NCBI GenBank assembly: GCA_053919585.1
Contig: CM132806.1
DNA: 64,000 bases
From: Euprymna scolopes
Taxonomy: Eukaryota
Strand: one strand, 5' to 3'
Below are positions 5,310-60,595 of this stretch, one piece after another. Under the pieces are notes generated by a model, which saw nothing but the letters and a program-made list of their open reading frames with translations, made no database searches and was not told where the DNA came from. The translations under genes were made by a program, and so were the position numbers. The number at the start of each line of letters is the position of its first letter. Position 1 is the stretch's first letter.

Positions 5310-5379
5310 ATGGAGGTGTCAAAATCACTTTTACTGCTGCTCATGGCTTTCTTATACATTGGAAATGTCAGCATAATGG
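5310..5379 (+). CDS. Coding exon 1 of EGF / Caspr-fibrinogen-like gene: signal peptide MEVSKSLLLLLMAFLYIGNVSIM(G)
   Basis: Polypyrimidine tract with tag acceptor at 5299-5300 (exon starts 5301, implying an upstream UTR exon). ATG at 5310, hydrophobic core, donor G|gtaaga, phase 1 matching the next exon. Confidence 0.8.
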
Positions 5380-5551
5380 GTAAGATATGCATTTCAAACT
5401 TTTACTGAAATTAATTTTAAGTAAATTAATGGCATTTGATTTAAAATTTCGCATTTATTAAAAAAAACAAACAAGAACGACACTAAACGTATAGTTTAAT
5501 CGCGTTTCAGAAGTTTTAAAATGAGGTCTTATTATTTATATTATTGTATTA

Positions 5552-5745
5552 TTTGAACTATTACGCATCTAACAAGCAGTATAGTATACAAACATAGTAT
5601 TTGGACTATGGCAACTGTAAGAAACAGTATAGTATACGAACATAATATGTGGATTATTACACCTGTAACAAACAGTATAGTATACAAACATAATATTTGT
5701 ACTATTACACTTGTAACAAACAGTATAGAATACAAACATAAGACA
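5552..5745. repeat. 48-bp minisatellite, ~4 copies (actattacacctgtaacaaacagtatagtatacaaacatagtatttgg)
   Basis: Visible tandem unit; the same unit recurs at 9790-9962. Confidence 0.9.
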
Positions 5746-6818
5746 TTCAATTTTCTTGCTCTGAACTGCTCTACTATGGAGTACAATACCGTAGCGCTGT
5801 TTCACAGCTGAATACAACATGATCGTTGACAATGGAAACAAATTCTTGTTGAGATGTTCATCTCCAATACTCTAATCCTACCCAAATTGTACACTTTTTT
5901 GATCCTATCAATCCTTACGGGTCACCTGGCAATAATTAATCCTTATCCTAGAGTGGTCTCTAGTAAAAAAAAATCGTATTGGATGCTGTTTTAATAAAGT
6001 TCTGTTTGATTTAACCTACAATGTTCTTCAAATACATTCTGTCAAACTCGGGAATCTGTTCTGAATTCATAAATGATTTATTTAATACGCGGAGGTAGAT
6101 TTTTCTCGTTCTGTCCGTCATGATTGATTATAATAAGTCTTCTGTGGAATATTTTAAAAAAATTCTTATTACCACTTGTAATCAAGATTGAACCTTCACC
6201 CTATCCAACACTGTTTAGAACTTATTATTACTGAACACTTTCATCTGTTGTGCCAGGTAATCGGTTAAAACATGTACTAATATAAACAGACCATTAGTGT
6301 CCAACCAGGACATTCTTAGTTAATTCAATGAACATACGTTGATTACAGCTGTTTCGCACCTATAAAGACGACTCGATTACATTGGATAATGAATAAATGT
6401 TTTTTTTTCACCATTTCTTATCTAGATTAGAGTGTGACGTGTAGATTGTTCCCAGCAGAAGAGTTTAGGAACAACAACGATGTGCGCACGGCGTCTTGGA
6501 TTGTTCAAATATTTGGAATTTCTCGCACATGCTGGCCTTGTCCAATACTCTGTGATTTTACGGTTACTTCTGATTTGCCATTATCTTTGACGAAACCAGT
6601 TTTATCTCGCAATCTCTTACAAAGAAAATGGAATGAACTTCCTCGTCTGATTAAAGCTGACTATTTTGAATATTCCTTCTTGCACTTTCTCTATATGACA
6701 TCGTTAAACATAAAACATTTAATGCATTAAGGATTCGTAAATGTTTTAAGGCAACTCATTATTCAATGCCGTTATTTGGAACCCGCCTTGAGACAAGCAC
6801 ATCAAGTCGTATTCTTAT

Positions 6819-7741
6819 TAGTTTTGGGACCATTAATCGGAATCGGAATCGGGCATTGGAAACGTTTGAACTTTTGTGGGTATCAAAATCGGTATCGGAA
6901 AAAAATTGAATTTTTGTGGTAATCGGAATCGGTGTCGGAATCGGTATCGGAATCGAGAAAATTAATGACTATTTTCCGATGCATGAAATGATTCCTATGA
7001 TGATTTATTTTTTGGATTTATTTTGCGTAAAACTTAATTTTTCAACGCTAGCACAAGTGAAACGTATGTTGCGCAGTCGGTTTTTCGTCACCCAGAAAAA
7101 AAAACAAAAACTTGTACACTTCGTTTTTGTATAAAAATATAGAACCTTTTATTTTCCGTTTCTTTATTTACTGCCTCATGTGCGTGCCCAGCAATAGACA
7201 GAGAGTATGGACGGGAAGGTGGACGGGTAGAACCACGAGCTTGTGCTTGCATGCTGACTGCAGGCTTCTCTCTTCTGTTGTCTTTTTTCTCTGGACTATA
7301 TATGTGACCCTCTCTTTGCAGGTGCTCTCACCTTCGACGGTTACCATGCATCAAATAGTTGACTTTTCAGTACTGAGGATATCAATTCCGACAACCTGAC
7401 CACATCGTCCACTACGTTTGCTACAAGATGTTATGCGTGCATTTGCGTGTGTGCACCTTTAACGCGTGACACAAATGATTAAAATGATCTTTTGATTTTA
7501 AACTAGCAATGAAATTAAAATCTCTCAATTACTCCAAAAGTGTATGTTTTATGTTTGCAAAAATATATGCATATAATACATTGGCTGTTACGGTAATCTG
7601 AAAAAAAATAATAAAAAACAATAAACTACATATTTAAATATTTTAAAAGAATCGGAATCGGTAATTTTATCCTAATCAGGAATTCACAATAGAATCGGTA
7701 ATTGTATTGGAATCGGAAAAATTGGATTTGTCCCATCACTA
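6819..7741. mobile_element. hAT-like non-autonomous element with internal (aatcgg)n subterminal repeats
   Basis: Imperfect TIRs tagttttgggac / gtcccatcacta. Flanks attcttat and ctacttat match at 6 of 8 positions (decayed 8-bp TSD). aatcgg arrays near both ends. Confidence 0.55.
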
Positions 7742-7824
7742 CTACTTATGAAAGAATGTTTATAAATATAAAGGTATATTTTGCAAAGTTACAGAGACTT
7801 TATTATAAGGATCTGTTAACAAAA

Positions 7825-8732
7825 CAGTATGGAACGATAAAATTGCGGCCATGGAAAACACGACATGATTCCATTTCCGTTTGGTGAAAACCAGTTTTCA
7901 TTGTTGCAGACGTTATGTACAAATCTCAAAAGCGATATGAGCCTTCTATCATATCTAAAAGTGACACCGTGTTCAACGAGCGAGATCAGAGATGCGTCGC
8001 TGTACAACTCATGCTCTCTACGGATCGAAGTTGTGACAAGAGGACGATTGCTAGCACCCTCAAAATGAATCGTTGGGTTGCCACGAATAACAGGAACGTA
8101 CCCAAGGCAATGAAAACAAAGTTTCTGATCACGGTTATGGTCTTCGGTTTGGTTCCAAGTGAGGGTCATATCATACCACCTCACATCTTCGAATTCAGCT
8201 TGAAAGTCAATACCAAAGTGTATTTACATGTGCTGAATAGTGTGGTGACACTTTGATGGAATCAGGTGGCCGCTGGCAGACCCTGGATGTGCGAGCAAGA
8301 GTCAGCGTCAGCCCACAAGTCTAAAGAGACAGAGGCTTAACTTTAGAAGGAGTGCTACGACTTTGTACTCTACTCTCATCGGCACCCCTCTTCCCCCGAC
8401 CTGAACCTGCTGGACTACTGTGTTTTAACATATGTCAAGGTTATCACCAACATTACCCTCCCCCCACAACACCAAAAACCAGCTTGATCGTTGTCATCCG
8501 CCAAGTATTCGCTGAGCTCCCGCCGAGCTCCCACCGGCGCTTGTGGAAAAGGCATGCTTTCTGTTCTGGACTCGTCTCGAAGCGGTGATTAGGGCTGAAG
8601 GCGGCTATATTGAATATATATCAGCTATTCTACATAAGAAATTAAACTAAATTGATGTTTTTCAATAAAAATTTTAAAAATAAAGTTGTAATGTTGTTTT
8701 CATTAGAGCGACACTTTTATCGTTCCACCCCG
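7825..8732 (+). mobile_element. Tc1/mariner-superfamily (DD37D/maT-like) element, internally deleted transposase remnant
   Basis: TIRs tggaacgataaaa / ttttatcgttcca with ta after the right end. Remnant motifs MVFGLV.SEGH..PP.IF and SPDLNLLDYCV. Confidence 0.8.
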
Positions 8733-9449
8733 TACTTAGGGTTTTACTCGGAGATTTAAAGGGTGTAAGAGACACGTGTATATCTATTATTAAATTAATT
8801 TATTACATATAGGAACGTGAAATTTAAGATCCTCTATCTAATCGTATAATTCTGAATAGATCATATAACTATTTATATTTCTAGTAGGATTGTGATGCGA
8901 TTCGAACAAACGTCAGCAATACAACTGCCTCTTTTTACTGCCTCCTCTGTTTTCTTTTGCTTCTTTGGAATACACTATCTTCTTCACTTCCAAATGCAAG
9001 TTTTCACACGAATGTGTTAACTTAATATTTCTGAAATGGCCCTTTTCGAATTGATTACGCTATGTGCTGATCCTGTGCAGTTCTAGGAGACCAACCTCCA
9101 TAAAATTTATCTTCTCTCTTCGAAATTGGGGTTAGTTTTTTTTACTAATCGCCGTAGGCTCCCCTATCGCGGAATCCCGACACGTCTACCTAGACATATC
9201 TTGCAGGCTGAGGTGCTTCTTCTCGATGGCGTTGATTCTTCATATTTCACTTTCCGAACCTTGAGTCACATCTCGTCGCAGGAAGGATGTAAATAATCAA
9301 CCCAGTAGCAATATTGAAATGCGCATGCGTAAAAAAACAAGAATCATAGCAAGTTATTTTATATGTACGATGAAACTTACGCACATAATGAAAAACAAAT
9401 TTCAAACAAGATCTTTTATATAACTTGTTTCATGTGGTCTTTTTTCCAG

Positions 9450-9602
9450 GTGAACAATATGGTTGCTCACTTCATGAGTTTGTTACTTGCCACCCACGGG
9501 CTAAGTGTATCGACCTGCCCGACGGCACATTCAATTGCATATGTCCAGAGAATTCAATTGGAGACGGCCTAAAGGGAGAAAATCATACTGGATGCGTTAT
9601 TG
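9450..9602 (+). CDS. Coding exon 2: EGF-like module 1 (EQYGCSLHEFVTCHPRAKCIDLPDGTFNCICPENSIGDGLKGENHTGCVI)
   Basis: tttttccag acceptor and gtaagt donor. 153 nt, phase 1-1, six Cys in EGF spacing. Confidence 0.93.
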
Positions 9603-9789
9603 GTAAGTTATAGATATATGTCTTAATGGCAAAACATATTAGTAGTGTTACTATAATTATTAACAAAATGTATTAGTATTATTACTGCAGTTTCTATCTA
9701 CTTTGCCTCCTCAGGAGGGCAGAGTTAGACTCCAAAGTTGTTTTTTAATGTGGAAAAAGTAAAAACAATTACAAATTGTCTCAGTAACT

Positions 9790-9962
9790 TAACAGGAACA
9801 AACAGTATAGTATAAAGACATAGTATTTTGACTATTACACCTGTAACAAACAGTATAGTATACAAATATAGTATTTGGACTATTACACCTGTAACAAACA
9901 CTATAGTATACAAACATACTAATTGAACTAATACACCAGTAACAAACAGTATAGTATACAAT
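9790..9962. repeat. 48-bp minisatellite, ~3.5 copies, same unit and orientation as 5552-5745
   Basis: Seen directly in the sequence. Confidence 0.9.
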
Positions 9963-10525
9963 AACTAAGGACAAAAAATTGAACAGATACTACTCTTTGT
10001 ATCTTGGCCCGAAGGCCAATGAATCTCTTATGGTTTTAAGAGTATTATTTTTATAGTTATTGGTAAATTAAGATATTTATATCTTATAACAAGCAGTTAA
10101 TAGTAAATTTTCGAAAGACACGAATGAATAAATTTGAATCCAAAGAGAAATATAGTTTGCTTGAAGCATTACTGAAAAACATGTGAGTATTTTACAATTA
10201 TTGCATGAAACCAGAACAGAGAAAGAGAATACGAACAAAACAAAGAATAGAATACAAAATTTAGATGACCAATCTTCAGATAATCTTATTTATCAAAAGA
10301 TTTTTCACATATCGAATCAGTAATTATGGGATTACTGTTTTATAATAATAAAAATATGTGGGATGGGGTAACATCTTTGACAATTGCTAACCCTAACCCT
10401 AACGCTCGCTCCTTAAAATGCATTCAACAGTAGACGACGAAAAACAATAATTTCAATTACTGAACTTACCATACATTTAACCATACTTTGAAATTTAACC
10501 ATATAGTGCAACGAAAAAAAAAATC

Positions 10526-10617
<92 letters not shown>

Positions 10618-12219
10618 TATACTTGTTATTCATTAGAAGTCTAATATATATGTATATTTGCTTTTATGAATAGTTTCTCATTCCCGCTAATGACGATTTG
10701 ATTGCTCTATCCACGAAAAAAAGTGGATGGATTTAAATCGTGATTCCTATTTTAAGCTTGCAAAATCGTCATTTGCCATCTCTTTATGTAATTGTAATTG
10801 CAAACAAATGCATTTATCTTCCAAGCTTTTAAATGAAAATTGACGTTTTCGTTTGTTTTCTCATATCTACGCGAATCTTTTATCGTCTTACAAAATGGGC
10901 TTTAAGCGTTCTTTCTTTACGAATGGATACGTTTGAATTGCGCCCGACTCCAGTTTTGAATCCAGAACAACTGCCCACCTATCTATCATCCGCCATTTTG
11001 TTTCCCGTTTCCCTTGCACAAAGACAAAGCAAGTTGTTTTCTCGTTATATACCTATGTTATTTTATTCTACATATCTGCTAATGTGACAGCGATCGCAGT
11101 TTTTAAATATAAATAAAAACATTGAAATAAGCGAATTATCAGATGGTAATAACATTTTAAGTATTCATTTTCATAAATGATTAATAGCCATTAAAATAGA
11201 CTGGCAAGATTAACCGACATTGCGACGATTTATGAAAAAGAAAACAAACGAAAACAAAATGCAATTATAGAAGTTTAAACTAAAATATACTTTCTTGATC
11301 GTTTGGCTAGGATCTAAGGGTAGTATTTGTTCTGTCTACAGATGGTATAATGATATCGTGGCGTCTATACAATAGAAATATATCACAAACTTTTATAAGG
11401 ATATTAGAGATAAACCGTAATAACCAGATATATTGTGGCACTACATTAATCAGATTATTTAGACAAATACTTTTACTGTTTTAGCAAAAGAGCTACAAAA
11501 ATATCGTGGGGCCTCCATTCACGCTGAATGTCGACAGAATGCCCAGCAGCAATATATTAAATATGAAAGATGCCGCTTTGGAATTTCCACAGGTCCCGTT
11601 AGTTTATACAAATAAAATTATAAGTGTAACCATTAAAAGTATTTTCATTCCTTTACATACAATTTTATACAGCGGCCATATTGTAATAATTGGGTCCATT
11701 ACTCAGAACTAGGACACAAATATGGTGTACTTACGTGATATTTCCCCTTAAATGTAAAACTTAAATATTTTTGCATCCAGCAATCTGTTTTTCTATCTTT
11801 GTCTTCAAATTTTTTCCGTTTTTTTACTCCCCCTCTCCCTTCCTCCACCAATCGCATTCCTCTCTTTTGTTTTAATGTATTGAAAATAATTACAGTATAA
11901 GGTTTTCATCTCGATTTTATATAATAGATAATATGATAAAAACAACCTGATTCCCCTGAGGAAATTTGACCCAATTGACTCCCAAAGAATGTATAATTAT
12001 TTTTAACTTTTAGATATTATTTTCTGGAATATGTTAACTTTGTGGGTATTTGTTTTGTAGTTTTTTTACATTTACTTTGCATTCTTTGTCTTGCATATAA
12101 TAAAACGTCTAGATTTGAAATTTAACCGTGTCATATCATAAAAATTAAGTTACTAAATTATGGTATATATATATATATTTAACCGTTTCACATCATAAAA
12201 ATTAAGTTACAAATTATGG

Positions 12220-12283
<64 letters not shown>

Positions 12284-12963: not shown

Positions 12964-13086
12964 AGGGTGAACGAATTGCGTGCATCGACAACAGCACATG
13001 CCATAAGACCTTGGGTTTCTGCAGTGTCAGCAACTTCTGTGAATGCATGGTCGGGTTCACGGGCGATGGTGTTTCCGATTGTAAAG
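12964..13086 (+). CDS. Coding exon 3: EGF-like module 2 (GERIACIDNSTCHKTLGFCSVSNFCECMVGFTGDGVSDCK)
   Basis: ttatttccatag acceptor and gtaagt donor. 123 nt, phase 1-1, CxC..GFTGDG..C motif. Confidence 0.93.
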
Positions 13087-27859: not shown

Positions 27860-30270
27860 ATCGGCTTGGAAATTATATTAGTATTCGTCATCAACTTAGT
27901 TAAGAAATTCTTGTCATTTTTTTTATTTCTTTTGTTTTTACAAGTATCTTTCTATCAGTGACGAATTTGCAAAACAACGTGCTTTAATTAAGAATAGCAA
28001 ACAATTATCTCCTTTTGTTCGAAGGAGATATGGTTATGAACATCATGGAAGCAAACATATATTACATTTTTCAAGCACCATGTTAACAGACACCGAGATT
28101 AAAGTCTTATCAAAAGGATTAGATTTCTGTGTCCCCCCTATTATTATAGATAAAGAGATAACCCTTGCTGCGTTCGAGGTTCTGTTATCTCAGATTATAC
28201 ATCATACCTCTATTTTACTGCATAATATTCCTACAATCGGATCCAGTTTAGTTGATCTGGTACACCGATACAGTAACGCTCCTATTGACCACGGGGATTT
28301 TGTTTGGAACAAAACATACTTTAAAACCATTAAAGAACTAAAATCAAATTCTGATATTTATATATGCCAACCAGACAAAGGAGCAGGAGTCGTGATCATG
28401 GATCGTTCAGACTACGTCGAGAAAATGTTATTATTCCGAACAAGTCATCTAAATTCCGTAAACTTGGACCTATCGGGTTGGCAGATAATACTTGCAAAAA
28501 TGAAATCAAAATGCAAAAGCGTCTTCTTGGATTATATAAAAAGAATATTTCTCGAATGACGTTATGACAGGATTAGACCTTCTGGATCATTACGTCCCAG
28601 ACTTTACGGTCTACCTAAAATACATAAGCAAGGTATCCCACTGAGACCTATTTTATCTATGATAGGCTCCGCTCAACATTCTTTGGCTAAGTGGCTTTAA
28701 AAATTTTGCAACCTGTGCGTGAGTTATATACTATGTACTATATACCTAATTCTTTCCGGCTTGTTGAGTATTTCCGTGGGTTAAATCCGGTTTTTGAGAC
28801 ATCTTTTATGTGTTGTTTTGATGTCTCTAGTCTTTTTACCAATGTACCATTGGATGAGACTATACATATTTGCAGCGACACACTCTATTGTGGTCGCCTG
28901 ACTCCTCCCCAGTTTTCTAAGGAGATATTCACAGAACTCGTATTAATGTGTACTAAATTATACAGTTTAGCTTCGCTGATATTATGTACAGTCAGGTCAA
29001 CAGGGTCTCAATGGGATGCCCATTGGCCCCAACTCTACCTGATATTTTCGTCGCTTATTATGAATCTGTTCTTTTCAGTTCAGGAACTAAACCCACGACG
29101 TAAGTTAGATATGTTGACGATACTTTTGCAATGTTTTCATCGCCAGATAAAGCGTCAGCAATTTTCTATGAGTTGAATTCCCTGTATGGGGCTCTGCAGT
29201 ACACTATGGAATGAGAGCAAGAAAACACTCTTCTCTTCTTGGATGTTCTTGTTGGTCGTTCAAGAAGTGGCTTTCTCACTACCATTTACAGGAAGCCGAA
29301 TTTTACTCGCTTGCATGTCAACTGGTCTTCTTTTGTACCTAAATCGCGAAGAATCGGCTTAATTAACACGTTGGTACATAGAGCCCGCATAATTTGTTCA
29401 TCTATTAAATTGAACACCGAACTGGATAAGATCAGGGATATTTCCATTGGTAATGGTTATCCTGAAGACCTTATTAATGATTGTATAAATAAAAAGATTG
29501 CTGATTTCAAATTCCCTAAAATATTTCGCCCTTTAAAATGCCGTGTTTACTTAAAATTGCCGTGGATACGGGATAATGGTACAGAATTAAGTAAACAGAT
29601 GGTTAGAAGTGATATTAATTGCTTCTACTCTGTTTCCTTGCGTTTGGTATTTACTACTAGACCTGCCATTCATTCTTTTTTAAAGGCTCGTTTGCTTTAC
29701 ATCCAAAATAGTAACATTATTTATCAATTTAAATGCCAGTGTGATGCTACGGACGGACTTCCCTGCATTTGCAGACTTGTATAATCCAGCACATTCCATC
29801 TAAGATTAGACAGGGTAAAGTGGGATCTGTGGGTCTCCCTTCCTCAACGATTTTGGACTCCGCAATTGGTCAACATCTGAGTGAGAATCCAGTATAAAAA
29901 AGAGTGATTTCAGATACTTCATAGAGCGGATTCTAAAAATCATTTAAACATTTTAGAATCTTTCTCTATCGCAATTCGTAAACATTTTTTTGTGCCGGCA
30001 GAAGGAATTCTTAAAAGCGCTAAATCTTTTCGGAGAAATTTGACCACCTCCCCATTTAACTTTTTTTTCCATCGCGGTGCTATTTTAATCGCTTTTTATA
30101 CGCTTTATTTAATCAAATTATTCGTTTTAACCGTCCTGTATTGGAATCTTTAATTTATAAAAGATCCCCCATTGATCTTTTTTTCGTCAATAATATTATT
30201 ACAATGCTATCGATTTCTCTTGATGAGATCATGGCTGAAGGGGCTCTTGAGAAATTTCCGCTTATTTTCA
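27860..30270 (+). mobile_element. Penelope-like retroelement (RT plus GIY-YIG endonuclease), frameshifted, with 3' pLTR abutting (TA)n
   Basis: Motifs PDKGAGVVIMDR, LYGLPKIHK..PLRPI, FDVSSLFTNVP, RYVDD, LDVLV, YRKP, NGYP and IIYQFKC.C. Degenerate hammerhead at 30216-30252. Confidence 0.92.
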
Positions 30271-30532: not shown

Positions 30533-30652
30533 ACATCGATGAGTGTGCGTCTGGTCACAATTGTCATAAGGACGCCATTTGCACGAATCTACCTGGATCT
30601 TACAACTGTAGCTGCAAACCCGGTCTTTATGGTGATGGAATAGACTGTTCGC
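30533..30652 (+). CDS. Coding exon 6: calcium-binding EGF ([40 protein letters not shown])
   Basis: T-rich tract with aag acceptor and gtaagt donor. 120 nt, phase 1-1, cbEGF consensus. Confidence 0.95.
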
Positions 30653-34642: not shown

Positions 34643-34746
34643 GAACTCCACCCACATGTCAAGGTGTACTTGATCTGAACCCACTTGCGAGAACAGGTTA
34701 TTACCAAATTGACCCTGATGGTTCAGGACCTTTAAAACGCATAAAA
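34643..34746 (+). CDS. Coding exon 7: start of Caspr-type fibrinogen-like domain 1 (TPPTCQGVLDLNPLARTGYYQIDPDGSGPLKRIK)
   Basis: tttttcag acceptor and gtaggt donor, phase 1-0. YYxIDPDGSGPL is the Caspr/Neurexin-IV signature. Confidence 0.93.
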
Positions 34747-41891: not shown

Positions 41892-42049
41892 GTATATTGC
41901 ATCATGCGCAAGAATCTAGGAATAACTGTTTTCGAAACGAAGTTTGCAATGTGGATTAGAACCGGAACACACCAAGTAAAATACAACACTGACCTTGCCA
42001 CCATAAAAAGTGTGATAAAGAACTCTGATTTTTGCTATCAACATATGTC
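41892..42049 (+). CDS. Coding exon 8: fibrinogen-like domain 1 continued (VYCIMRKNLGITVFETKFAMWIRTGTHQVKYNTDLATIKSVIKNSDFCYQHMS)
   Basis: ttttcag acceptor and gtaagt donor, phase 0-2. VYCxM and S.FC.Q motifs. Confidence 0.92.
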
Positions 42050-44838: not shown

Positions 44839-47800
44839 AGTACATCCAAGTTTGGAATACTGATGCCACATCTGGACAGGGGCTGCTAAAAACAGCCTAT
44901 CCTGCCTTGACAGAGTACAAAATAGACTTCATGACTTAGTGGAGGGATGCCCTTTTTTCTTTCATGCAACATCTCTCCTACAGAAGAGACGTTGCAAGCC
45001 TGTCTTTGTTTTATTGTTATTTCCATGGCAAGTGCTCGTCTGAGCTCCAATCTCTGCCCCCCCTCGCCAATCTTTCACGATAAACACCCGTCTAGTTGAA
45101 ACCACTGTCAATAACATCGGTCAACAAAAAGAAACTTTTTAAAAGGTGTCTGATATTTTTTAACTGATTTGCTATATTTTTGCCATGCTAAATCTAGAAA
45201 TAACATCCATTTTGCTCTCGGAGGTCAAATTTTTTTGTAAATTTGAATTTAAAATTATTCGACTTATATTTAAAAAAAAATGTTTTCAAGATTTGCTAAT
45301 GATGTTTCAATGGCAAAATGTCAGTTTTTATGATAAAATTGCTGTATTCTAACAAAGAATCATGTACACTTCATATATAGTACATATAACTAAAAATGAA
45401 AACTTAATGTTTGATTATTACGGTCTAAACTTTCGTTGTTTTTGATTGTCTTGAATGTTTTGGTGCTTGCACACCTCTTTTTAAATTCCAACAGTAGTCC
45501 GCCATCATCACCCTGTCCCACCTTCCCTGGTAGCCTGATTCCATTTCTCTCAAGTCCTGGTGAAAGCACTCTCCATGCTCATCGCTTAAAGAGCCAAGAT
45601 TTTCGGGAAAGCGGTCCATGTGCGAGTACAGGTAGTGCATTTTTATGCTCATATTGCAGCCAAGGTTCCTAAAGCCCACTAACATGTTTGCTACTACATC
45701 TTTATAGTTCTCTGCTTTTGTGTTGCCTAGGAAATTCATCACGACCTGAACAAAGCAATTCCACGCTTGTTGCTCAACAGGATTTATGGTCTCCTCAAAC
45801 GCGGGAGAGTTTTTGATCGGCTGCCTAATTTGAGGACCATAAAAATACCAGCTTTTAATTTTTCAGTTGACAAATTGAGGAAGGTTTTACACAGAAACTG
45901 AAAACACCGTCCATCTTTATCCAGGGCTTTTGTGAATTGCTTCATCAAACTGAGCTTTATGTGCAGTGGAGGAAATAAAATACGTCCCCTGTCAACTAGA
46001 GGCTTGTTTATCAGATTTTTTGCTCTACAAATTGCAAGCTCTTCACGTACTGGCCATTCTTTTTTCACGTAATGTTGAGTACGATCCCTACTATACCAGA
46101 GGCATAAAAAGCATGGGTATTTAGTGAATCCAGACTGTTGACCAAGCAAGAAATTGACCATTTTTAAGTCAACGCAAATCAGCCAATTATGTTGGTCATA
46201 AGAAATTTTTTCTAGGACGTACTTAATTGCTTCATGCTATTCTTTTAATGTTGTCAAATGTGCCAATGGCACAGATGCAAATTGATTTCCATTGTGTAAT
46301 TTCAAACACCTTTTGCTGCTGTCGATAAAAAGTCGCCAGTCCTCTGATTTGTATTCAGGTACGCCGAGATGTTTCAGTAGCTCTTCTATGTCATTGCAAT
46401 AGACTAATTCTTTTTCTTGAGCAAAATATCTTAAAAATTCCTGGTGCCTGGTACGAAAGAAACTTACCTTAACTTTACCATTTAGCATGTTCTTGTCCTT
46501 TAAACTAGATGCAAGTAGTTCGGCAGAGTCTTTTGGCAAATTTAAATCGCAAACAAGATCGTTTAGTTCGTTTTGGGAAAACAATTTTGGCTGCTCATCA
46601 TTGTCATCGGGAAAGGATGCATCATGATGATCATCGGTAGTGGTAATGCTTTGAGTTTCATGCTGGCTACTGCTGCTTTCTTCAATACTTGTATCTTCAA
46701 ATACAGGTACAGGAATTTCTTCACTATGAGGAGTAGAGCGCATAGCTGACGGCAGGTTGGGATACTCTAGTGTTGTGCGATTTTTTTCTGTTAATCCCAA
46801 TGACATTGATAGCACAAAAGTAGCAATCGGTTTCATGATTTGAAGGCTCTCGCCAAATCATGGGGATGCCAAAGTTCATGGACTTTCGCGTGCCTTTGCT
46901 CCATTGACGGAAATACTCTGTGCATCTTTTGCAAACCATGTGAGGTGCCCAACGTTTGTCTTGATCGTCGAGCTTCATGCCAAAATATGCATAGTAAACG
47001 CGTTTGATAAAGGTGGTGACAGTATTGCGATTTGGTGCAAGTGTGTATTCACCACAAACATAGCAAAAAACATCTGGCTTATTTACACACATTCTTCGAG
47101 TCGCCATTGTATACCTGAAAAAATTAAATTTGTGTACGTTGTCTCCATGAAATTTAAAGTCTGTATCAAAAAAAATCGGCACAATTATATCTATGTCCTG
47201 GAACACAATAATGAAATAATTTGACTCTTAAACACACAGAACCAATACGTAAGACTTACATCCTCGTCTGCTTTCATATGTTGGTGTGTTTTAATAACAA
47301 GTTTTACCATTGAATTCCCTTATCTTATCTTTAAATATCGCATAATAATCGCAAAACTTAGACTCCCTAATTAAAATGTAATCAAAAATTGTTTATTCAA
47401 ATGCTTTCTTCTTTGTATTTCTAGTGCTAAAAAATTTAAATTTGTTCATGTAATAGAATTTTAAACGGTAAACGGTTAATACTTCTGTTGTACCTTTCTG
47501 GGGTATTTAAAAGTTAAAAAATAGAAAATTAACGATAGCTTAAAATGTCGACCTGACCCAGCAAAAAGAGTGTTATTTTTGGATTCAGCACATCCAAAAT
47601 TGTCCAAAATCAGCTTACAAAACTGAGACACCAAATTTGCTGTTGACCAGTGTAATTTTCCCCACTCTTTATCTGTGCCTTAATCAAAGCGTAGATTCCA
47701 TGAGCAAAGCTCCTTTCTTAGAAGTAAACGACTGTAGAACGCTCTTCCGTTTGCCTGTTTCTCACCTTACTACAACTTGGATGTCTTCAAGTCCAACATA

Positions 47801-48156: not shown

Positions 48157-48259
48157 ATTCAAAAGCGACTCATCGCAATTGTTCAATGGAAACACATACT
48201 GGACAGATGGAACCGGAAGGAAGCAATTCAACTGGGGCGGAAGTAATGACACTGGCACG
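48157..48259 (+). CDS. Coding exon 9: fibrinogen-like domain 1 continued (FKSDSSQLFNGNTYWTDGTGRKQFNWGGSNDTGT)
   Basis: ttttctcaag acceptor, phase-2 entry, W...WGG motif. The weak donor gtcggt gives the phase 0 that exon 10 requires. Confidence 0.88.
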
Positions 48260-49292: not shown

Positions 49293-49482
49293 TGTTTATG
49301 CGGGGTCATCGGATATTGCTCTGACCCCACAAAACTTTGCAACAATGACGGTTCAGCTGGTTCCAAAACAGATTCAGGTAAAATCATCGACAAATACTTG
49401 TTACCGATCCAAGCAATCACAGTAAATGGCAAACAATCTCACGTCAAATTCGGTGATGTGATGTGCAGTTCAAAACCTTTCG
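49293..49482 (+). CDS. Coding exon 10: end of fibrinogen-like domain 1 (CLCGVIGYCSDPTKLCNNDGSAGSKTDSGKIIDKYLLPIQAITVNGKQSHVKFGDVMCSSKPF)
   Basis: ccttcag acceptor and gtaagt donor, phase 0-1. Caspr pattern CxCG...C.DP..CN.D...D.G...K..LP...G...C. Confidence 0.93.
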
Positions 49483-53170: not shown

Positions 53171-53202
<32 letters not shown>

Positions 53203-54289
53203 GTGATAAGTGGGTTAAACCAGTGACCTTGCTAGGCTAATAAGAGAAATATTATTTTGGTAAAATAAGTTTCGCTAAAAGTTAATCATGTAAATAGTTA
53301 AGTGATATGTTTATAGATTTAGGTGTAGTTAGCCATAAACATAAGAATGTAGACATCCGAACCAATACTTGATAAGTGGCATGGTTCACGCCACATTTAG
53401 AAAGGTGACCGGAGGTCATGTTAAGAAGACGTGTCCTTTAATCGGCTACGTCACCGGAATTGACAGATCGAAACGATTAGAGCTGGGAGTTTGGATTTGG
53501 TCACCAAAGTGTGCATGCATACTCAAAAGGCTAGAAAAACACATGTAGACACGTAGTAGACTTTGTGAAACACGGAGACATCTGAAATAAATTTATATTG
53601 ATAAAATATAAAGTTTTCTCAATCATCTTATTGTGTTAGTATGGTGGACAGTCATCACAGCGTCCAGCACCAGGGACACAAAGGACCTCCGGACAGAAAG
53701 GTATGAAGCATGATTCTTCTTCTTCCACATTGTGCCCCTTGACACTTCCGACTAATTTGATAAGCAGTAAAATCCCACGCCACCACTATTGAGATCTTCA
53801 GATGCTGACAAACCTTCTACTGTAACAATTCCTTTCCTCTGACTGGTAAACTTTAGAACTCCCTCCCCAATTCCTTCTTCCTTTCTTAATTCCCATGCAT
53901 AAGTTTAAATATAATGTGAACAAACATCTTACTGGTTAACTGCCTACAAGATATGATCCAAAATACTTACCCCTTTTTTGGGGGGGCGGTGAAGATTTAA
54001 GTATATCAGTAATTTTTTTGCTATTTTTTTAATCTACAGTTTCGGGTTTATTTTAAGTTCAAAAGTTTCTTACTTCGCCAACATATGTATATCTTATGTT
54101 AATTTATGACAAATCTCGACTTTAACTTTATTTAATGGCTGAGGTTTTATTAAAAGTACACATATTGTAATAGTGTAAAATCTTTGGGCGGTTATACGCT
54201 ATATAGAAGTAATACACTTATATGAAAATAGTAAGGTTTGAATATAATCATTACACTCACATCTTGAGATCAAAATGAGATTTAAATGT

Positions 54290-55240
54290 ATAGAGAGTGT
54301 TGAAACAAAACAAAAAATGAAAAAAAAAAAAAACAGAATAGGCAATGAGCCAAAAATTTGTGTATGCACAGAAAAACTTTTTTTTTTGGGGCAGTAGTTA
54401 GATTTATATATTACATCATTTTCAACAAATCGTTATCAGTGGAGACTACTAGCTCCAAGCGGTTAAGAAATGAGTCAAACGATTTGGTTACTATATCTTT
54501 GTTCATAGCAACTTTACACCTTCACGGTGCCAGCCTTCACATAGTCGCCCGTTTTGTGGATGTACTTGTGTATTTTGGCTTTAATCACGCTCCAGAAGAA
54601 ACAGTCAAGAAATTGCAGTCAGGTGGAAAAGTTAGCAACGTGCCACGAACAGTGCAAAAAAAAAAAAACATTATTCAGCTGTCACGCGTTAGTCGTCTGG
54701 GCCTTCTTGGCCAGACTTGGTTTCTGTAGGAAGGCTTTGGCTTGTGAGGCAGCTATCTTATCTACACAGGACTAACCTTTGATCATTATCATCTCAAGAT
54801 TTCGTCTACTTTTTGTTAAGCGTCGGGTTTTGTCTGTAACACCCTGTTTAAAAAGAGAAACTATCCGACAAAAGCTCTCAGGATGCCGATGTCTGTAAGC
54901 TCTTGTGATACTTTTAAAGATTTTTACGTTAAACGATAGGAAGCAAGTCGTAGTTTATGTAAGCGCGTACTATTGCACATGTGAATTTTCAGCAATGAGC
55001 GACCAAGAAAGAAATCAATAAAACAAAGTATTTTTACATACGTGCGAGGTCGCTGCTCTCAAATCTCCGATCGTCGCTTTTCTATGCGTGGGTTATGACC
55101 CTTCGTCGATGTTGATCTGTTTAACTGTAGAGTGTCCTTTTCCTCTACGCGAACTGGATTAAACATTTTTTTTTATTTTTTTTTTTACTTTGAATACCTG
55201 AGGTCACCCCATCTTCTATTTCGACGCCTGTACATACCAT
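54290..55240 (-). mobile_element. Possible very decayed Tc1/mariner-like remnant
   Basis: Minus-strand DCFFWSVIK resembles the D.F.W motif after the third catalytic residue. Ends not resolved. Confidence 0.35.
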
Positions 55241-55832
55241 CCGCAGCCGGGCCCATCCCCTTTTATTACCACTTTATTCTGACATATATTCTCATGTGTT
55301 TACCTGTTTAACTCAAGAGGAATCTAATCATGCATGGAAACACAATAGAGGCTTGCTGCGATTTCAAAGGTTTTATTCAGAGGATTTGCTCGTCGTAAGA
55401 GATGCCACGTAAAAAATTTCTTAATTTTCTTACTTATCCCTTACATGGTCGACGTGCGAGCAAAGTCTAGGAGCCATATTCACTAAAATTATCTCTACAT
55501 CTTTAGAACACATACTGTCTCTCTCGCTTCCAAAGTTCAATGACTCGAAATTCTGTTCTCTCTCCCGAACTCGCGACATTAATTCTTTCTAATACCATTC
55601 GACACCAGAATTTCTAGTGCGTTTTGTCTAGGGAAGTAACCCTTAGCATCCCATTTCAATCACACCACCAGAATCTGGTTTATTTATGTTTGTCCTCAGG
55701 TTATCCTGACATGTACTTATGTATCCTTCGTCAATATTCATACTAGTTAACGTAATCTCTACTTACGGGCGTAAGATCTGAATATATAAAATAGTTATGA
55801 ATAATCTCGATTTCTATTTTCTTTTCTTTCAG

Positions 55833-55998
55833 ATTTTCCTCGTGATTGTCATGAAGCTAAATTTACATATGGCATCAAACACAACGAATCCATGTTTATT
55901 GATGTTGATGGACCGGAAGGACCACGTCATCCAATACCAATCTATTGTCAAATGAAAGAAGAGTTTCATGTCGGAATAACTATTGTCTCTCACAAACA
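55833..55998 (+). CDS. Coding exon 11: start of fibrinogen-like domain 2 (DFPRDCHEAKFTYGIKHNESMFIDVDGPEGPRHPIPIYCQMKEEFHVGITIVSHK)
   Basis: ttctttcag acceptor and gtacgt donor, phase 1-2. PRDC...IDxDG..GP..P..YCxM...T.VSH motif. Confidence 0.93.
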
Positions 55999-57978
55999 GT
56001 ACGTATCACGTCCTGTTGTCTCTTTTCACAGAAGGTTTGCACGTGTGATTATATTTAGTTTGTAGCAGTGACGAAATGGTTTATCCCGCATGTAGGAGTT
56101 GAAGTGAAAATGAATTATTTAATGATTAGTATCGATTTTTGGCAATATTTTATCTTCCAAGTCAATGCAAATTACTACAAATATTCTTTATTTTTTGATC
56201 CAGCTAACACTATATCGTATGAATAAATATTTAAAGATATAAACAACTTGACGTATAAAAGCGGTTTTTTTTTCAAAACATTTTTATAGGAAGCTAATAC
56301 CGTTGGTTGGGTTATAATGCTTAAGTTTGAAATAGAATTTTCTTTAATTTTGTCTGTTATGCTTAAAATTGGAATAGTGTATTCAAATTGGAATAGTGTA
56401 TACATATGTATCCACCCATCGGTCAATCAGACTATTGCTGTAAATATATATTAAAAACTGAATTACATGTGATTGTCTCTGCCCCTTCCACGAAATATGG
56501 GTCAATTTTATTTTGTTTTCAAACTCTCATTAAATTATAGAATTATATATATGATNNNNNNNNNNNNNNNNNNNNNNNNNNNNNNNNNNNNNNNNNNNNN
56601 NNNNNNNNNNNNNNNNNNNNNNNNNNNNNNNNNNNNNNNNNNNNNNNNNNNNNNNNNNNNNNNNNNNNNNNNNNNNNNNNNNNNNNNNNNNNNNNNNNNN
56701 NNNNNNNNNNNNNAATAATTTTTGCAAGGAATGAAGCTGGTTAAACAAAATATTGTTAGGAACTTAAAAGATTACGCTACAAGATTCAATTTAAAATTTA
56801 TAAATTTTCAAAGTGAAATTTTATAAACTGTACAGAACCTGGTATATAACTTTAATTGACTTTAAATCTAAAAAGTATCTTTTATGTTATGTTATGTTAT
56901 ATATATTTTGTTGCGCATAAAATAAGTCTCTACATTACTAGTAAAACCATGTTACTACGCCCCACCTTATCAGAGAAATAACTTTTTCAAATGATCAGTG
57001 AAAAACAAATAAAACAAAATTAAGAACACCCCCCAAAGCAGTAAAATCAATCTCTTTTCACGCACCTCTAGAAAAGAAATTCTTTTTTAAGTGAGCACTG
57101 ACAAAAATAGAGCACAGTAATGAATCCAGTAAATAAAATTAAGCAGGCTTCTAGAACACTACTGGAACCAAATTCTTCTTCTAGAGGAGAATTTATATTT
57201 TAAAGAGGCCTCCAGTGCACGATTAAAATAATTTTTAAGTACCTTATTACTTATTTAAAAAAAAACTACACGATCTTTTTATGCAATTTTTTTTATTGTA
57301 CGACTTTTTTTTCTGCCACAATCGAGATATACAGTTAGATTATCAAATAAATGGTATATCTTTAAGCGATTTTAAAATAGAAAGGTCAGTAGATTATTTC
57401 CAAAAGCTAGTTATTAAGATTATTGTTAGATTATTGTAAGGTAAGATTATTGTTAGGGAGAACAAAGTGTATCAATATATAATAGAACATAATGTATCAA
57501 TATATAAGAAAACATAATGTATCAATATATAAGAGAAATAATTATGCGAACATATTATTATAACTCACAGAAAGAGATCCTAGAACTGAGAGAATCCCGA
57601 ATAAAATGAGATAAAAAAATTAAGAAAAAGTGTAGTTAATATCCCAAAAGCGGAAAGTTATCTAATCCAAACAACAAATGAATACAAAATCCAGACATCA
57701 ATAAATAAAAATGGATGTAAACCATATATGCATAAAAAAGTCGGTAAAAGGATAAAAAAATCAAACCTATAGATAGAAAGGTTAATAAGACAATGATAAT
57801 ATTAACTATTAATGGGAAAACACTAAAATGAAAAGATGCGGGAAGAGAAACGAATTTAAATTACTTAATATGAATAAATAAACAAATATGTACAAAAAAT
57901 AAAGAAAGTAAAAAAGTACAGAAATGGAAAAAAAGGAAAGGAGTAAGAGACAATGGAGATAATATAGGAAGATAGAAA

Positions 57979-59663
57979 TTTCCTCCTATAACACAGAACA
58001 AGCTAGGTAACATACAAATATCCGTGCATGAGGTCGCCAAGCTAATCAAGAACCTAGATTCCAGTAAAGCAACTGGCCCTGATGGCATCCCAATTATAGT
58101 GTTAAAAAAGCTTCAACCAGAACTTGCTCCCATACTTACGAAACTATTTAAGCGCTGCCTTAAGGAGAAGTGCTTTCCGACTCCCTGGAAGACCTCATCA
58201 GTTTGCCCTGTATTTAAGAATTCAGGTGATAAGTCATCTCCCTCTCAGTACAGACCAATAAGTCTCCTGTGTGTTATGAGTAAGTTGCTGGAATCCATAT
58301 TAAATAGAGAAATAGTCAACCACCTCAGCAGGAATAACCTTCTTAGTGACACACAATATGGTTTCCGCTCTACAAGATCTACCGCAGATGTGTTGACGGT
58401 TATATCCCACACGATTAGTGAATCTCTTGACAAAGGCTTCCTTTCTAGGGCAATTGCTCTTGACATATCAAAGGCCTTCGACAAGGTATGGCACAAGGGT
58501 CTACTTCACAAGATTTCCAGCTACGGTATAACTGGAAATGTTTTCTCAATCATTAAATCATTTCTCTCCGATAGGCTCATAAGAGTAGTGGTAGATGGAG
58601 AAAAATCGGAGGCCTGCAATATAAATGCTGGAGTCCCTCAGGGGTCAATCCTGGGCCCAACTCTCTTCCTGATCTACATCAATGACCTCCCTAAACACAT
58701 ACTTAAATCATTCGTTGACATCTATGCTGATGACACAACCATCTACCGCAACACATCAAAGGCTGTAAATGACAAAGTTCTCTCTGATTCTCTCTCCTCT
58801 GATCTCGAGCGCGTGGTTCAGTGGGGGAAGATGTGGCTGGTTACCTTTAATGGATCCAAAACCAAACTCCTATCCTTACATCATCAACGCTCTGATCCCC
58901 AGCTGGCATCAATTGTGATGGATGGCTCTCGTCTGGGTGAGGCCCCGTGTTTTGACAAGCTTCTGGGTTTGACTTTTACTCCTGATCTGAAATGGAACAC
59001 GTACATCAAGTCTGTTGCCAAGGTCGCTGGAAAGATGGTGGGATCCTTCTGCCGCTCCAGAAGATATCTCACTACTGATGCAATTCTCTATCTATATAAA
59101 AGCTAAGTACGTCCAAGAATGGAATACTGTTGCCATATCTGGGCAGGAGCTGCTAAAAACAGCCTATCCTGCCTTGACAGAGTACAAAATAGACTTCGTG
59201 GCTTAGTGGGGGATTCCCTTTTCTCTACCCTGCAACCTCTCTCCCACAGAAGAGACGTTGCGAGCCTATCCTTGTTTTATCGTTATTTCCATGGCAGGTG
59301 CTCGTCTGAACTCCAATCTCTGGTCCCCCTCGCCAATCTTTCATGAAAAACACCTGTCTAGCTGAATCCACTGTGAAAAATTTCCCCCACTTTATATCTG
59401 TGCCTAAATCAAAACGCGGATTCCATGAACAAAGCTTCTTTCTTAGAACTGCACGCCTGTGGAACTCTGTTCCGTCTGCCTGCTTCCCACCGGACTACAA
59501 CCTGGATTTCTTCAAGTCCAACGTTAACACATTTCTAATAAACCACCGCCTTAAGTAAACACTTCATCAAATCTCCACAGTAATGTAATGTACTTGCAAT
59601 AACCCTTACCCTTGAGTGGCTTCCGGGCCTTGATAAGTGGTGATCATTGTTTAAAAAAAAAAA
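57979..59663 (+). mobile_element. 5'-truncated CR1/L2-group LINE with near-complete RT domain
   Basis: ORF 58024-59106: KATGPDGIP, YRPISLL, QYGFR, LDISKAFDKVWH, GVPQGSILGP, YADD. One CAA-to-TAA stop at 59104 and a frameshift near 59340. Poly(A) at 59653-59663. Confidence 0.95.
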
Positions 59664-60335
59664 GGTTTTCGAGTGGGCGTATTAAAATGTATCAACAAAT
59701 ATGAGTTAAAAAGCAAAGAGAAGACAGACTAATATATGCATGTTAACAGACTAGACAAACAAAAACTATGTCAAAGAGACAGCAATGTGGGTTCCTTCAG
59801 TCTTGACAGACAATGGGTACCCACTTTGTTGCGCATAAAATAAGTAAGCCTTTAGAGTACTACTAAAACCATGTTACTACGCCCCACCTTATCAGAGAAA
59901 TTACTTTTTCAAATGATCAGTGAAAAACAAACTGTACGTGAAATTTGTGTGGCAAGAGTTGCGCAGTCTCAAGAGAAAGAAAATTAAAACTGTAAGTTGA
60001 ACTTTACAATCAAAATTTATTGTTCGATTGAATACTCCAAAAAACAATTTACGAACTTCTTATTCCGCAGTTTCAAAGATTGCTATTCTTTTTATTCTTA
60101 TCATCAGAGGACATAAAGAAATCAGCAAATTATATTTGTATCAATGCTAGAATTTGCTAGTTAAGGCATTAAGTGAAACCACAATTTATTGTAGTTATAA
60201 ATTGCCCCAAAAAACAAACAAAAAAAATTGAAAAAATGTTGGATATGTAAAAACCCAAACCGCGCATAATATTTCAGCTTGAATGAAACTCCTCTCAAGT
60301 TGATCCAAAATGTAAATGTATTCTCTCTCCCCCCC

Positions 60336-60379
<44 letters not shown>

Positions 60380-60471
60380 TTATTTAATTTTATTTTAAAC
60401 ATCAGGTAGGCCATTGCTTCATATGGTACCTACGCTAAACGGAAAATATCCATCTTATTTATTTTTGCCAG

Positions 60472-60595
60472 AATTGTAAGTACGGAAGCAAAACCCGGCG
60501 TAATAACTATCGAATACTCCTCGCCAATGGAGGACATCCGTGAATTGATTGCAAATTCGAGATTCTGTATACAGGAATTAAAATACGAATGCAAG
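60472..60595 (+). CDS. Coding exon 12: fibrinogen-like domain 2 continued (IVSTEAKPGVITIEYSSPMEDIRELIANSRFCIQELKYECK); gene continues beyond the window
   Basis: tttttgccag acceptor and gtaacg donor, phase 2-0. Caspr motif Y...M..I..LI..S.FC.Q...Y.C. Confidence 0.92.

What the first reader, a model, noticed from the sequence alone, without database searches (positions are those of the whole stretch)
5310..60595. Hidden 12-exon gene: signal peptide + 5 EGF + tandem Caspr-type fibrinogen-like domains, without LamG or discoidin
Seen: 12 exons with canonical GT-AG ends whose phases (1,1,1,1,1,1,0,2,0,1,2,0) join into one 514-codon open frame. Known: the IDPDGSGPL...VYCxM...C.Q...WGG...CxCG...LP module is the fibrinogen-like domain of Caspr/CNTNAP and Neurexin IV. 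There it is a single domain between laminin-G domains, behind an N-terminal discoidin domain. Here it directly follows an EGF/cbEGF array and is repeated at once. Inference: this is not a Caspr orthologue but a separately assembled secreted or surface protein using the module as a tandem building block (possibly a matrix, mucus, adhesive or recognition protein). Automated pipelines would probably mislabel it 'contactin-associated protein-like'.
Basis: partly seen in the sequence, partly recalled or inferred. Interest (0 to 1): 0.75.

Follow-up and report, generated by a model that had tools for sequence, protein, structure and literature searches.

The report
Start of giant seven-module secreted gene
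The twelve exons are real and expressed, but they are only the first fifth of a 2,606-residue secreted mollusc protein that strings seven copies of the "Caspr fibrinogen-like" module (whose predicted fold matches the collagen C-propeptide) in front of a mucin/VWF-type assembly domain; the family is unstudied.

Summary
Observation confirmed. All 12 exons, their GT-AG ends, their phases and the 514-codon open frame reproduce. An assembled public transcript (L028, 98-100% identical to the genome) has every junction exactly as predicted. The three N gaps lie in introns, and the mRNA shows that no coding sequence is missing there.

Interpretation partly right. The gene is not a Caspr orthologue: its product has no LamG domain, no discoidin domain and no transmembrane segment. 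It does use the Caspr-type module in tandem. The gene spans about 323 kb and about 52 exons. Its order is signal peptide, 5 EGF, 7 modules, 3 cbEGF, a VWD-C8-TIL assembly like those of FCGBP, MUC2 and VWF, more cbEGF, Kazal, TSP1 and a weak VWF-type cystine knot.

The seven modules correspond position by position in cephalopods, gastropods and bivalves. Trichoplax proteins also carry exactly seven. Databases list these proteins as "uncharacterized". A Biomphalaria orthologue was detected by mass spectrometry in snail-conditioned water.

The modelled module fold matches the procollagen C-propeptide (Z 14.2) far better than fibrinogen (Z about 5).

Most likely role (inferred): a secreted, disulfide-linked mucus or matrix component.

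Earlier scan notes did not cover this locus.

The parts
5301..5379 (+). First coding exon (second exon of the mRNA). It holds 9 nt of 5' UTR, the ATG at 5310, and the signal-peptide-like N-terminus MEVSKSLLLLLMAFLYIGNVS. It ends in phase 1.
   Evidence: Transcript L028 53-131 aligns at 100%. The only hydrophobic 19-mer of the whole protein lies here.
9450..9602 (+). EGF 1, a phase 1-1 exon.
   Evidence: Pfam EGF scores 28.3 bits, above its cut-off. Transcript junctions are exact.
12964..13086 (+). EGF 2, phase 1-1.
   Evidence: Six-cysteine pattern and a sub-threshold EGF_3 hit. Transcript junctions are exact.
17943..18081 (.). Assembly gap inside the intron between EGF 2 and EGF 3.
   Evidence: The mRNA runs from 13086 straight to 20255 with no extra sequence.
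20255..20377 (+). Calcium-binding EGF 3, phase 1-1.
   Evidence: Pfam EGF_3 47.8 bits and EGF_CA 45.1 bits.
23287..23494 (.). Assembly gap inside the intron between EGF 3 and EGF 4.
   Evidence: The mRNA runs from 20377 straight to 24422.
24422..24529 (+). EGF 4, phase 1-1.
   Evidence: Weak EGF and Teneurin-EGF hits plus the cysteine pattern.
30533..30652 (+). Calcium-binding EGF 5, phase 1-1.
   Evidence: Pfam EGF_3 44.8 bits and EGF_CA 40.3 bits.
34643..34746 (+). Module 1, part 1 (..YYQIDPDGSGPLKRIK). It enters in phase 1.
   Evidence: Module HMM covers P0206 234-417 at 2e-56.
41892..42049 (+). Module 1, part 2 (VYCIM...FCYQHM).
48157..48259 (+). Module 1, part 3 (...NWGGSNDTGT). The donor ACG|gtcggt is weak.
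   Evidence: The transcript confirms the junction 48259|49293.
49293..49482 (+). Module 1, part 4 (CLCG...LPI...CSSKPF). It leaves in phase 1.
55833..55998 (+). Module 2, part 1 (...FIDVDGPEGP...IYCQM...).
56556..56713 (.). Assembly gap inside the intron between the two module-2 exons of the window.
   Evidence: The mRNA runs from 55998 straight to 60472.
60472..60595 (+). Module 2, part 2, and the last coding exon inside the window. Module 2 is completed 6.1 kb further on, outside the window.

Best explanation
Shown: the twelve exons are the 5' fifth (residues 1-514) of one large gene. The gene spans about 323 kb and about 52 exons on contig C24, in what other scan notes call a squid genome. 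It is transcribed and spliced into an mRNA of about 8.2 kb that encodes a 2,606-residue protein. The domain order is a signal peptide, five EGF domains and seven tandem modules of about 190 residues. Three calcium-binding EGF domains and one VWD-C8-TIL 'D assembly' of the FCGBP/MUC2/VWF type follow. The protein ends with further cbEGF, two Kazal-like units, one TSP1 repeat and a C-terminal cystine-knot-like domain. It has no membrane anchor, no mucin-type Ser/Thr/Pro stretch and no collagen triple helix. Each module and each EGF is bounded by phase-1 introns. This is the exon-shuffling cassette format, and it explains how the array was built.

Shown: the module is homologous to the so-called fibrinogen-like domain of Caspr/CNTNAP. 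Its confidently predicted fold is that of the fibrillar procollagen C-propeptide (COLFI).

Inferred: the protein is secreted. It probably becomes a disulfide-linked multimer through its D assembly and cystine knot, as mucins, FCGBP and VWF do. It would then serve as a non-mucin structural component of mucus or another extracellular matrix. The seven individually conserved modules would be distinct binding or self-association surfaces.
For: Gene structure: transcript L028 aligns to the genome with exact GT-AG junctions for 40 exons. The remaining 3' exons lie colinear on C24 up to about 50524163. The 5' UTR exon lies 86 kb upstream. Exon translations are 503/505 identical to P0206.

Architecture: Pfam finds EGF_CA, EGF_3, VWD, TSP_1 and Kazal and, in orthologues, TIL. 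There are seven module-HMM domains. Residues 1700-2120 match FCGBP, MUC2, MUC5AC/B and VWF D assemblies at E 1e-36 or better. The C-terminus matches the VWF CTCK domain at E 0.015. No hydrophobic segment exists beyond the signal peptide. There is no PTS stretch and no G-X-Y run.

Module: AF2 pLDDT is 96 and pTM 0.90. Foldseek's best hits are procollagen III/I C-propeptides at TM 0.61-0.64, E 1e-9. VIA-align gives 5k31_A Z 14.2, with the next row at 6.6. Atlas TM is 0.89 to a CNTNAP5-named cluster. CNTNAP2 is hit at 7e-43.

Conservation: the protein is about 2,600 residues with seven modules in Octopus, Lottia, Pecten, Mercenaria, Dreissena, Babylonia, Biomphalaria and Lymnaea. Module i matches module i best in 7 of 7 cases, and most positions form clades.

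Secretion: the Biomphalaria orthologue LOC106052747 was identified by mass spectrometry in snail rearing water, together with mucin-2 and a SCO-spondin-like protein. Its peptides include the module's CNCD motif (PMC12639052).
Against: No experiment addresses the function in any cephalopod. The CTCK assignment is weak (E 0.015). There is no PTS domain, so it is not a classical gel-forming mucin. A single D assembly may not be enough for mucin-like polymerisation. Detection in snail water shows release, not a role in mucus. The signal peptide was judged by eye and hydropathy only. The structure is a prediction made on the orthologue's module 1 (P0001), which is about 70% identical to the window's copy.
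Confidence: 0.75

Rival explanations
1. One reading: a separate, moderate-sized secreted protein with a signal peptide, five EGF domains and just two Caspr-type modules, whose C-terminus lies shortly beyond the window.
For: Within the window only two modules are visible, and the frame is still open at 60595.
Against: One transcript contig runs on through five further modules and a D assembly. Two other cephalopod transcripts and many mollusc gene models have the same 2,600-residue layout.
Confidence: 0.03
2. It is a divergent Caspr/Neurexin-IV orthologue, a membrane adhesion receptor of septate or paranodal junctions.
For: The module is homologous to the CNTNAP domain.
Against: The full product has no F5/8-type-C domain, no Laminin_G domain and no transmembrane segment. 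A different locus, C24:57504434-57515131 (-), matches the CNTNAP2 EGF and module in the right order and is the better Caspr candidate.
Confidence: 0.01
3. The molecule is the same but its role differs: a fibrillin-like structural protein of connective tissue or basement membrane, not a component of mucus or other secretions.
For: It has many cbEGF domains and a TSP1 repeat. Automated names are 'fibrillin-1/2' in Trichoplax and 'fibrillin-2-like' in a jellyfish relative. The COLFI-type fold is otherwise known from a matrix protein.
Against: There is no TB/8-Cys domain. The closest solved relatives of its D assembly are the mucus proteins FCGBP, MUC2 and MUC5. The snail orthologue is shed into water.
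Confidence: 0.2
4. It is a soluble pattern-recognition or lectin-type immune protein, by analogy with invertebrate fibrinogen-related proteins (FREPs, ficolins).
For: The N-terminal 58 profile positions of the module match fibrinogen, angiopoietin, ficolin and tachylectin domains at E 1e-5 to 1e-7. The snail study groups the released proteins under 'immune proteins'.
Against: The match to fibrinogen-type domains is only partial (TM 0.32, Z about 5). It does not cover the fibrinogen P-domain, where ligands bind. No Fibrinogen_C Pfam hit was found.
Confidence: 0.07

Closest known systems
Mollusc orthogroup of predicted ~2,600-residue proteins (Lottia gigantea V4AG22 'VWFD domain-containing protein', Octopus sinensis LOC115209782, Pecten maximus LOC117321874, Mercenaria LOC123560993, Dreissena LOC127863381, Biomphalaria LOC106052747)
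   Same: They have the same length and the same order of signal peptide, EGF array, seven modules, cbEGF, VWD(-TIL) and cbEGF. Module i is most similar to module i.
   Different: There is no difference in kind; this is the squid-type member. None has a name, a described function or a paper about it. The only trace found is a proteomics table entry.
Caspr / CNTNAP1-5 / Drosophila Neurexin IV
   Same: They share one homologous module, the domain annotated 'fibrinogen C-terminal-like'.
   Different: Caspr has a single copy set between LamG domains, an N-terminal discoidin domain and a transmembrane anchor. This protein has seven copies and none of those other parts.
Fibrillar procollagen C-propeptide (COLFI, PF01410; PDB 5k31, 4ae2)
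   Same: It is the best structural match over nearly the whole module (Z 14.2, 160 residues; TM 0.61-0.64). The profile also hits it at E 4e-7. A Trichoplax module passes the Pfam COLFI threshold.
   Different: This protein has no collagen triple helix. This gene's own modules score below the COLFI cut-off (19 bits against 26). Whether the modules trimerise is unknown.
FCGBP, gel-forming mucins (MUC2, MUC5AC/B) and VWF
   Same: All have a VWD-C8-TIL D assembly (E down to 1e-181 summed over FCGBP repeats). A possible C-terminal cystine knot is also shared. All are secreted.
   Different: This protein has only one D assembly, no PTS region and no VWC or VWA domains. The seven-module array is absent from those proteins.
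Trichoplax sp. H2 'Fibrillin-1' and 'Fibrillin-2, partial' (RDD42651.1 and a 2,505-residue protein)
   Same: They have exactly seven tandem modules flanked by EGF arrays, followed by VWD and TIL, at 31% identity over 97% of residues 1-1600.
   Different: They have many more EGF repeats. Position-by-position orthology of the modules with molluscs is only suggestive.

Membership tests
Caspr / CNTNAP / Neurexin IV | N-terminal discoidin (F5/8 type C) domain | tested here: not met
   There is no PF00754 hit in P0206 at E<=1e-3, while CNTNAP2 (P0078) scores 1e-31.
Caspr / CNTNAP / Neurexin IV | Four laminin-G domains flanking the module | tested here: not met
   P0206 has no Laminin_G hit, while CNTNAP2 has four.
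Caspr / CNTNAP / Neurexin IV | Single-pass transmembrane anchor | tested here: not met
   The only hydrophobic 19-mer (KD>=1.6) lies at residues 3-25, in the signal peptide.
Caspr / CNTNAP / Neurexin IV | The 'fibrinogen-like' module itself | tested here: met
   The module HMM hits CNTNAP2 589-790 at 7e-43 end to end. Atlas TM is 0.89 to a CNTNAP5-named cluster.
Fibrinogen-related domain (FReD, PF00147) | Pfam Fibrinogen_C match and the full A-B-P subdomain fold | tested here: not met
   There is no PF00147 hit. Only profile positions 3-58 match. TMq is 0.32 and Z 5.1-5.2.
COLFI (fibrillar collagen C-terminal domain, PF01410) | Fold of the procollagen C-propeptide | tested here: met
   5k31_A gives Z 14.2, rmsd 3.5 A over 160 residues, with the next row at Z 6.6. 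Foldseek gives E 1e-9 and TM 0.61-0.64. This rests on a predicted model with pLDDT 96.
COLFI (fibrillar collagen C-terminal domain, PF01410) | Pfam score above the gathering cut-off | tested here: inconclusive
   The module scores 19.1 bits against a cut-off of 26.2. The homologous Trichoplax module scores 75 bits.
COLFI (fibrillar collagen C-terminal domain, PF01410) | Location after a collagen triple helix; chain trimerisation | tested here: not met
   There is no G-X-Y run of 5 or more. Trimerisation cannot be tested with these tools.
Mucin / VWF / FCGBP-type polymerising proteins | VWD-C8-TIL D assembly | tested here: met
   VWD scores 97.5 bits. Residues 1700-2120 align over about 400 residues to the FCGBP, MUC2 and VWF assemblies.
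Mucin / VWF / FCGBP-type polymerising proteins | C-terminal cystine knot (CTCK) | tested here: inconclusive
   The VWF CTCK (4nt5) matches at E 0.015 over 70 residues. There is no Pfam hit.
Mucin / VWF / FCGBP-type polymerising proteins | Ser/Thr/Pro-rich O-glycosylated region (mucins proper) | tested here: not met
   The highest S+T+P content in any 100-residue window is 27%.
Mollusc seven-module VWFD protein orthogroup | About 2,600 residues with seven modules in conserved positions between an EGF array and cbEGF-VWD | tested here: met
   (7 of 7 on the diagonal against Lottia and Pecten).

The most novel reading that the evidence does not exclude
The seven-module array with its EGF and D-assembly frame is an ancient metazoan protein. 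It was fixed at seven individually specialised modules before the mollusc classes split, and possibly before placozoans and bilaterians split. The 'fibrinogen-like' domain of vertebrate Caspr would then be a lone surviving copy of this COLFI-fold module. The module might mediate oligomerisation or calcium-dependent assembly, as the procollagen C-propeptide does. That would give a new handle on what the unexplained Caspr domain does.
Probability: 0.3. Interest if true: 0.6.

Novelty: new variant of a known kind. Interest (0 to 1): 0.45.

Why it matters
First, it turns a sequence-only guess into a verified, expressed gene model and shows the true extent of the gene. Second, it defines a conserved but entirely unstudied family of large secreted proteins in molluscs, with look-alikes in Placozoa; the family is probably part of mucus or matrix. 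Third, the domain that databases call 'fibrinogen-like' in Caspr/CNTNAP, a protein family linked to autism and autoimmune encephalitis, belongs to a widespread mobile module. That module has no Pfam family that its copies in this gene or in CNTNAP2 reach, and its predicted fold is that of the collagen C-propeptide. No paper in the searchable library mentions both COLFI and Caspr. These are useful leads, not a surprise that overturns anything.

Tried and rejected
The 3' exons were located instead by a protein search of the own genome.
- Exon-by-exon Pfam gave nothing for the module exons.
- Literature searches by orthologue accession or by concept found nothing, except one proteomics table. One search call was malformed.
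- The idea that the downstream modules are separate tandem genes was rejected, because one transcript spans them all.
- The idea that the N gaps hide exons was rejected.
- Firm positional orthology with the Trichoplax modules was not obtained (2/7 and 4/7 best hits on the diagonal; unresolved deep nodes).
- The joined 514-codon model was built only inside a script, to count stops and to align it with a database protein. Searches used single exons by reference, or proteins that the tools themselves returned.


Full report

I rebuilt the model from the sequence. Six-frame scans located a signal-peptide-like start at 5310. They also located five cysteine-rich EGF-type open segments and the segments carrying IDPDGSGPL, VYCIM, NWGG, CLCG...LPI and FIDVDGPEGP...IYCQM.

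Choosing AG/GT sites that keep the frame gives twelve exons: 5310-5379, 9450-9602, 12964-13086, 20255-20377, 24422-24529, 30533-30652, 34643-34746, 41892-42049, 48157-48259, 49293-49482, 55833-55998 and 60472-60595.

Joined inside a script only, they make 1542 nt, which is 514 codons without a stop. The two other frames of the same join carry 23 and 37 stops. Pfam recognises exons 2-6 as EGF, EGF_3 or EGF_CA, and finds nothing in the later exons taken singly.

**2. The gaps**

The three N runs (17943-18081, 23287-23494, 56556-56713) all fall in introns. The mRNA described below passes from 13086 to 20255, from 20377 to 24422 and from 55998 to 60472 without any extra sequence. Nothing coding is therefore lost in them. 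I did not fill them or look their letters up.

**3. Transcript evidence**

However, a profile of the C-terminal part of the module (A1), searched against 1.84 billion representatives, returned 1401 hits. The top hits were proteins of about 2,600 residues with seven matched stretches.

- The best hit, P0001 (2,604 aa), comes from Logan transcript contigs of about 8.4 kb. It aligns colinearly to the window and its downstream flank at about 75% nucleotide and 73% protein identity, so it is an orthologue from a related species.
- A word-index search with P0001 then found P0206 (2,606 aa). Its contig L028 (8,209 nt, run SRR27666080) matches this genome at 98-100% nucleotide identity, block by block.
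- Refining the block ends gives 40 exons in the 184 kb I hold. All have GT-AG ends and 29-30 of 30 flanking bases matching.
The in-frame exon translations are 503/505 identical to P0206 1-514.
- An intron-free contig that spans more than 300 kb of genome can only come from spliced RNA. The gene is therefore expressed and spliced as predicted.

**4.

The first 52 nt of the transcript map 86 kb upstream, at C24:50201239-50201288. The 'first' exon therefore begins at 5301, behind an AG.

Downstream of the window the open frame continues. Module 2 is completed at window-equivalent 66692-66992. Five more modules follow, up to 145844. After them come three cbEGF exons (149395-161833) and the VWD exons (164381 onward). 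The remaining 3' exons lie colinear on C24, up to about 50524163.

The gene thus covers about 323 kb and about 52 exons. The window holds 23% of the coding exons and 20% of the protein.

No module or EGF exon lies in the 100 kb upstream. In the whole genome the module profile finds only this locus plus one other, at C24:57.50 Mb.

**5. The protein (P0206)**

- Residues 1-23 are a hydrophobic leader, the only hydrophobic 19-mer in the chain.
- Five EGF domains follow.
- Seven modules occupy 234-417, 419-614, 616-797, 796-994, 996-1174, 1173-1377 and 1379-1575.
- Three cbEGF domains follow, then VWD at 1712-1861.
- Residues 1700-2120 align over about 400 residues to the VWD-C8-TIL assemblies of FCGBP, MUC2, MUC5AC/B and VWF.
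- More cbEGF, Kazal and TSP1 units come next.
- The last 117 residues weakly match the VWF cystine-knot domain, at E 0.015.
- There is no Laminin_G, no F5/8 type C, no collagen repeat and no Ser/Thr/Pro-rich stretch.
- Every module and every EGF is bounded by phase-1 introns, while the introns inside modules differ from copy to copy. This is what exon shuffling of 1-1 cassettes predicts.

**6. What the module is**

An HMM built from the seven modules of P0001 hits tenrec CNTNAP2 at 589-790 (7e-43), lamprey CNTNAP2 (1e-39) and tick and jellyfish relatives, end to end. That stretch of CNTNAP2 lies between its LamG domains.

The fold label is not. Three lines of evidence point to COLFI instead.

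- Sequence against solved structures: a 94-sequence alignment (A2) hits fibrinogen-type domains only over its first 58 profile positions. It hits procollagen C-propeptides over 110 positions.
- Structure: AlphaFold2 on A2 gives pLDDT 96 and pTM 0.90. Foldseek ranks procollagen III/I C-propeptides first (E 1e-9, TM 0.61-0.64), with fibrinogen at TM 0.32. VIA-align, run independently of Foldseek, gives 5k31_A Z 14.2 over 160 residues. The next row scores 6.6, and FGL1 and fibrin score 5.1-5.2.
- Pfam: both this module and the CNTNAP2 segment get only a sub-threshold COLFI hit. A Trichoplax copy passes the COLFI cut-off at 75 bits.

The ESM Atlas shows the same fold (TM 0.87-0.90) joined to Ig, TSP1 or LamG domains in cnidarians, arthropods, molluscs and chordates. 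The module is therefore a widespread mobile unit of the COLFI superfamily, and no Pfam model is reached by its copies in this gene or in CNTNAP2.

**7. Relatives**

Proteins of about 2,600 residues with exactly seven modules occur in Octopus, Lottia, Pecten, Mercenaria, Dreissena, Babylonia, Biomphalaria and Lymnaea. Module i of the squid-type protein scores best against module i of Lottia and of Pecten in 7 of 7 cases. A quick ML tree groups most positions as clades, with SH-aLRT 92-99. The seven copies had therefore already diverged before the mollusc classes split.

Two Trichoplax sp. H2 proteins also have exactly seven modules, flanked by EGF arrays and followed by VWD and TIL. Their positional match to molluscs is only suggestive.

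Shorter arrays of two to five modules occur in hemichordates, echinoderms, a brachiopod, a flatworm, a jellyfish, ticks and some fishes.

Source names for these proteins are 'uncharacterized protein', 'VWFD domain-containing protein', 'mucus 2', 'zonadhesin' and 'fibrillin'. Only some fragments are called 'contactin-associated protein-like 2' or 'neurexin-4-like'.

A better Caspr candidate in this genome lies at C24:57504434-57515131 (-). There an EGF and a module match CNTNAP2 in the right order.

**8. Function**

Nothing is published on the family, with one exception. The Biomphalaria orthologue LOC106052747 was identified by mass spectrometry in the rearing water of three snail species, alongside mucin-2 and a SCO-spondin-like protein. 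Its peptides include CNCD-motif peptides of the module (PMC12639052).

The rest of the case for function comes from the architecture: a leader peptide, no membrane anchor, a mucin/FCGBP-type D assembly and a possible cystine knot. Taken with the snail result, the most likely role is a secreted, disulfide-linked component of mucus or matrix. This is an inference. The rival readings (fibrillin-like matrix protein, lectin-type immune protein) are listed with their tests.

**9. Verdict**

The gene is a new member of an unstudied, conserved family. Interest is moderate.

Other scan notes call this genome a squid (s1-280705). I did not verify the species.

Noticed in passing
window 57976-59103 (+), continuing to about 59555: This is a stop-free stretch of 376 codons with a strong reverse-transcriptase match (RVT_1, 3e-36). 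It is a LINE-type retroelement fragment sitting in the sense orientation inside the intron between the two module-2 exons. A nearly identical short translated piece occurs at 95-229 (-) and at 58706-58840 (-), so a second copy of the element lies at the window's start.
   Followed up: partly
window 62030-62405 (+): A repeat of about 375 nt is present in at least 40 other places of the genome at 94-97% identity, on many contigs. It looks like a young, abundant SINE-like family.
   Followed up: partly
G000:C24:50201239-50201288 (about 86 kb upstream of the window's exon at 5301): The first 52 nt of the transcript map here at 100%. This is a non-coding first exon, followed by an intron of about 86 kb.
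   Followed up: partly
G000:C24:57504434-57504745 (-) and 57515015-57515131 (-): This is the only other place in the genome found with the module. Together with an upstream EGF match it is colinear with CNTNAP2 residues 519-766, so it is probably the true Caspr/Neurexin-IV-like gene.
   Followed up: partly
P0209, P0210 (Trichoplax sp. H2 'Fibrillin-1' / 'Fibrillin-2, partial'): These placozoan proteins carry exactly seven tandem modules plus EGF, VWD and TIL, the same count as in molluscs. One of their modules passes the Pfam COLFI threshold.
   Followed up: partly
P0024, P0025, P0020 (sturgeon 'versican core protein-like', bichir and shark uncharacterized proteins): Some non-teleost fishes have proteins that end in two tandem copies of the module. 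Vertebrates therefore keep the module outside the CNTNAP family.
   Followed up: no
window 21013-22262 (+), 28080-29784 (+), 45784-47206 (-): These are clusters of ORFs of 125-212 codons inside introns, with no Pfam hit at E<=1e-3. They may be decayed mobile elements.
   Followed up: partly
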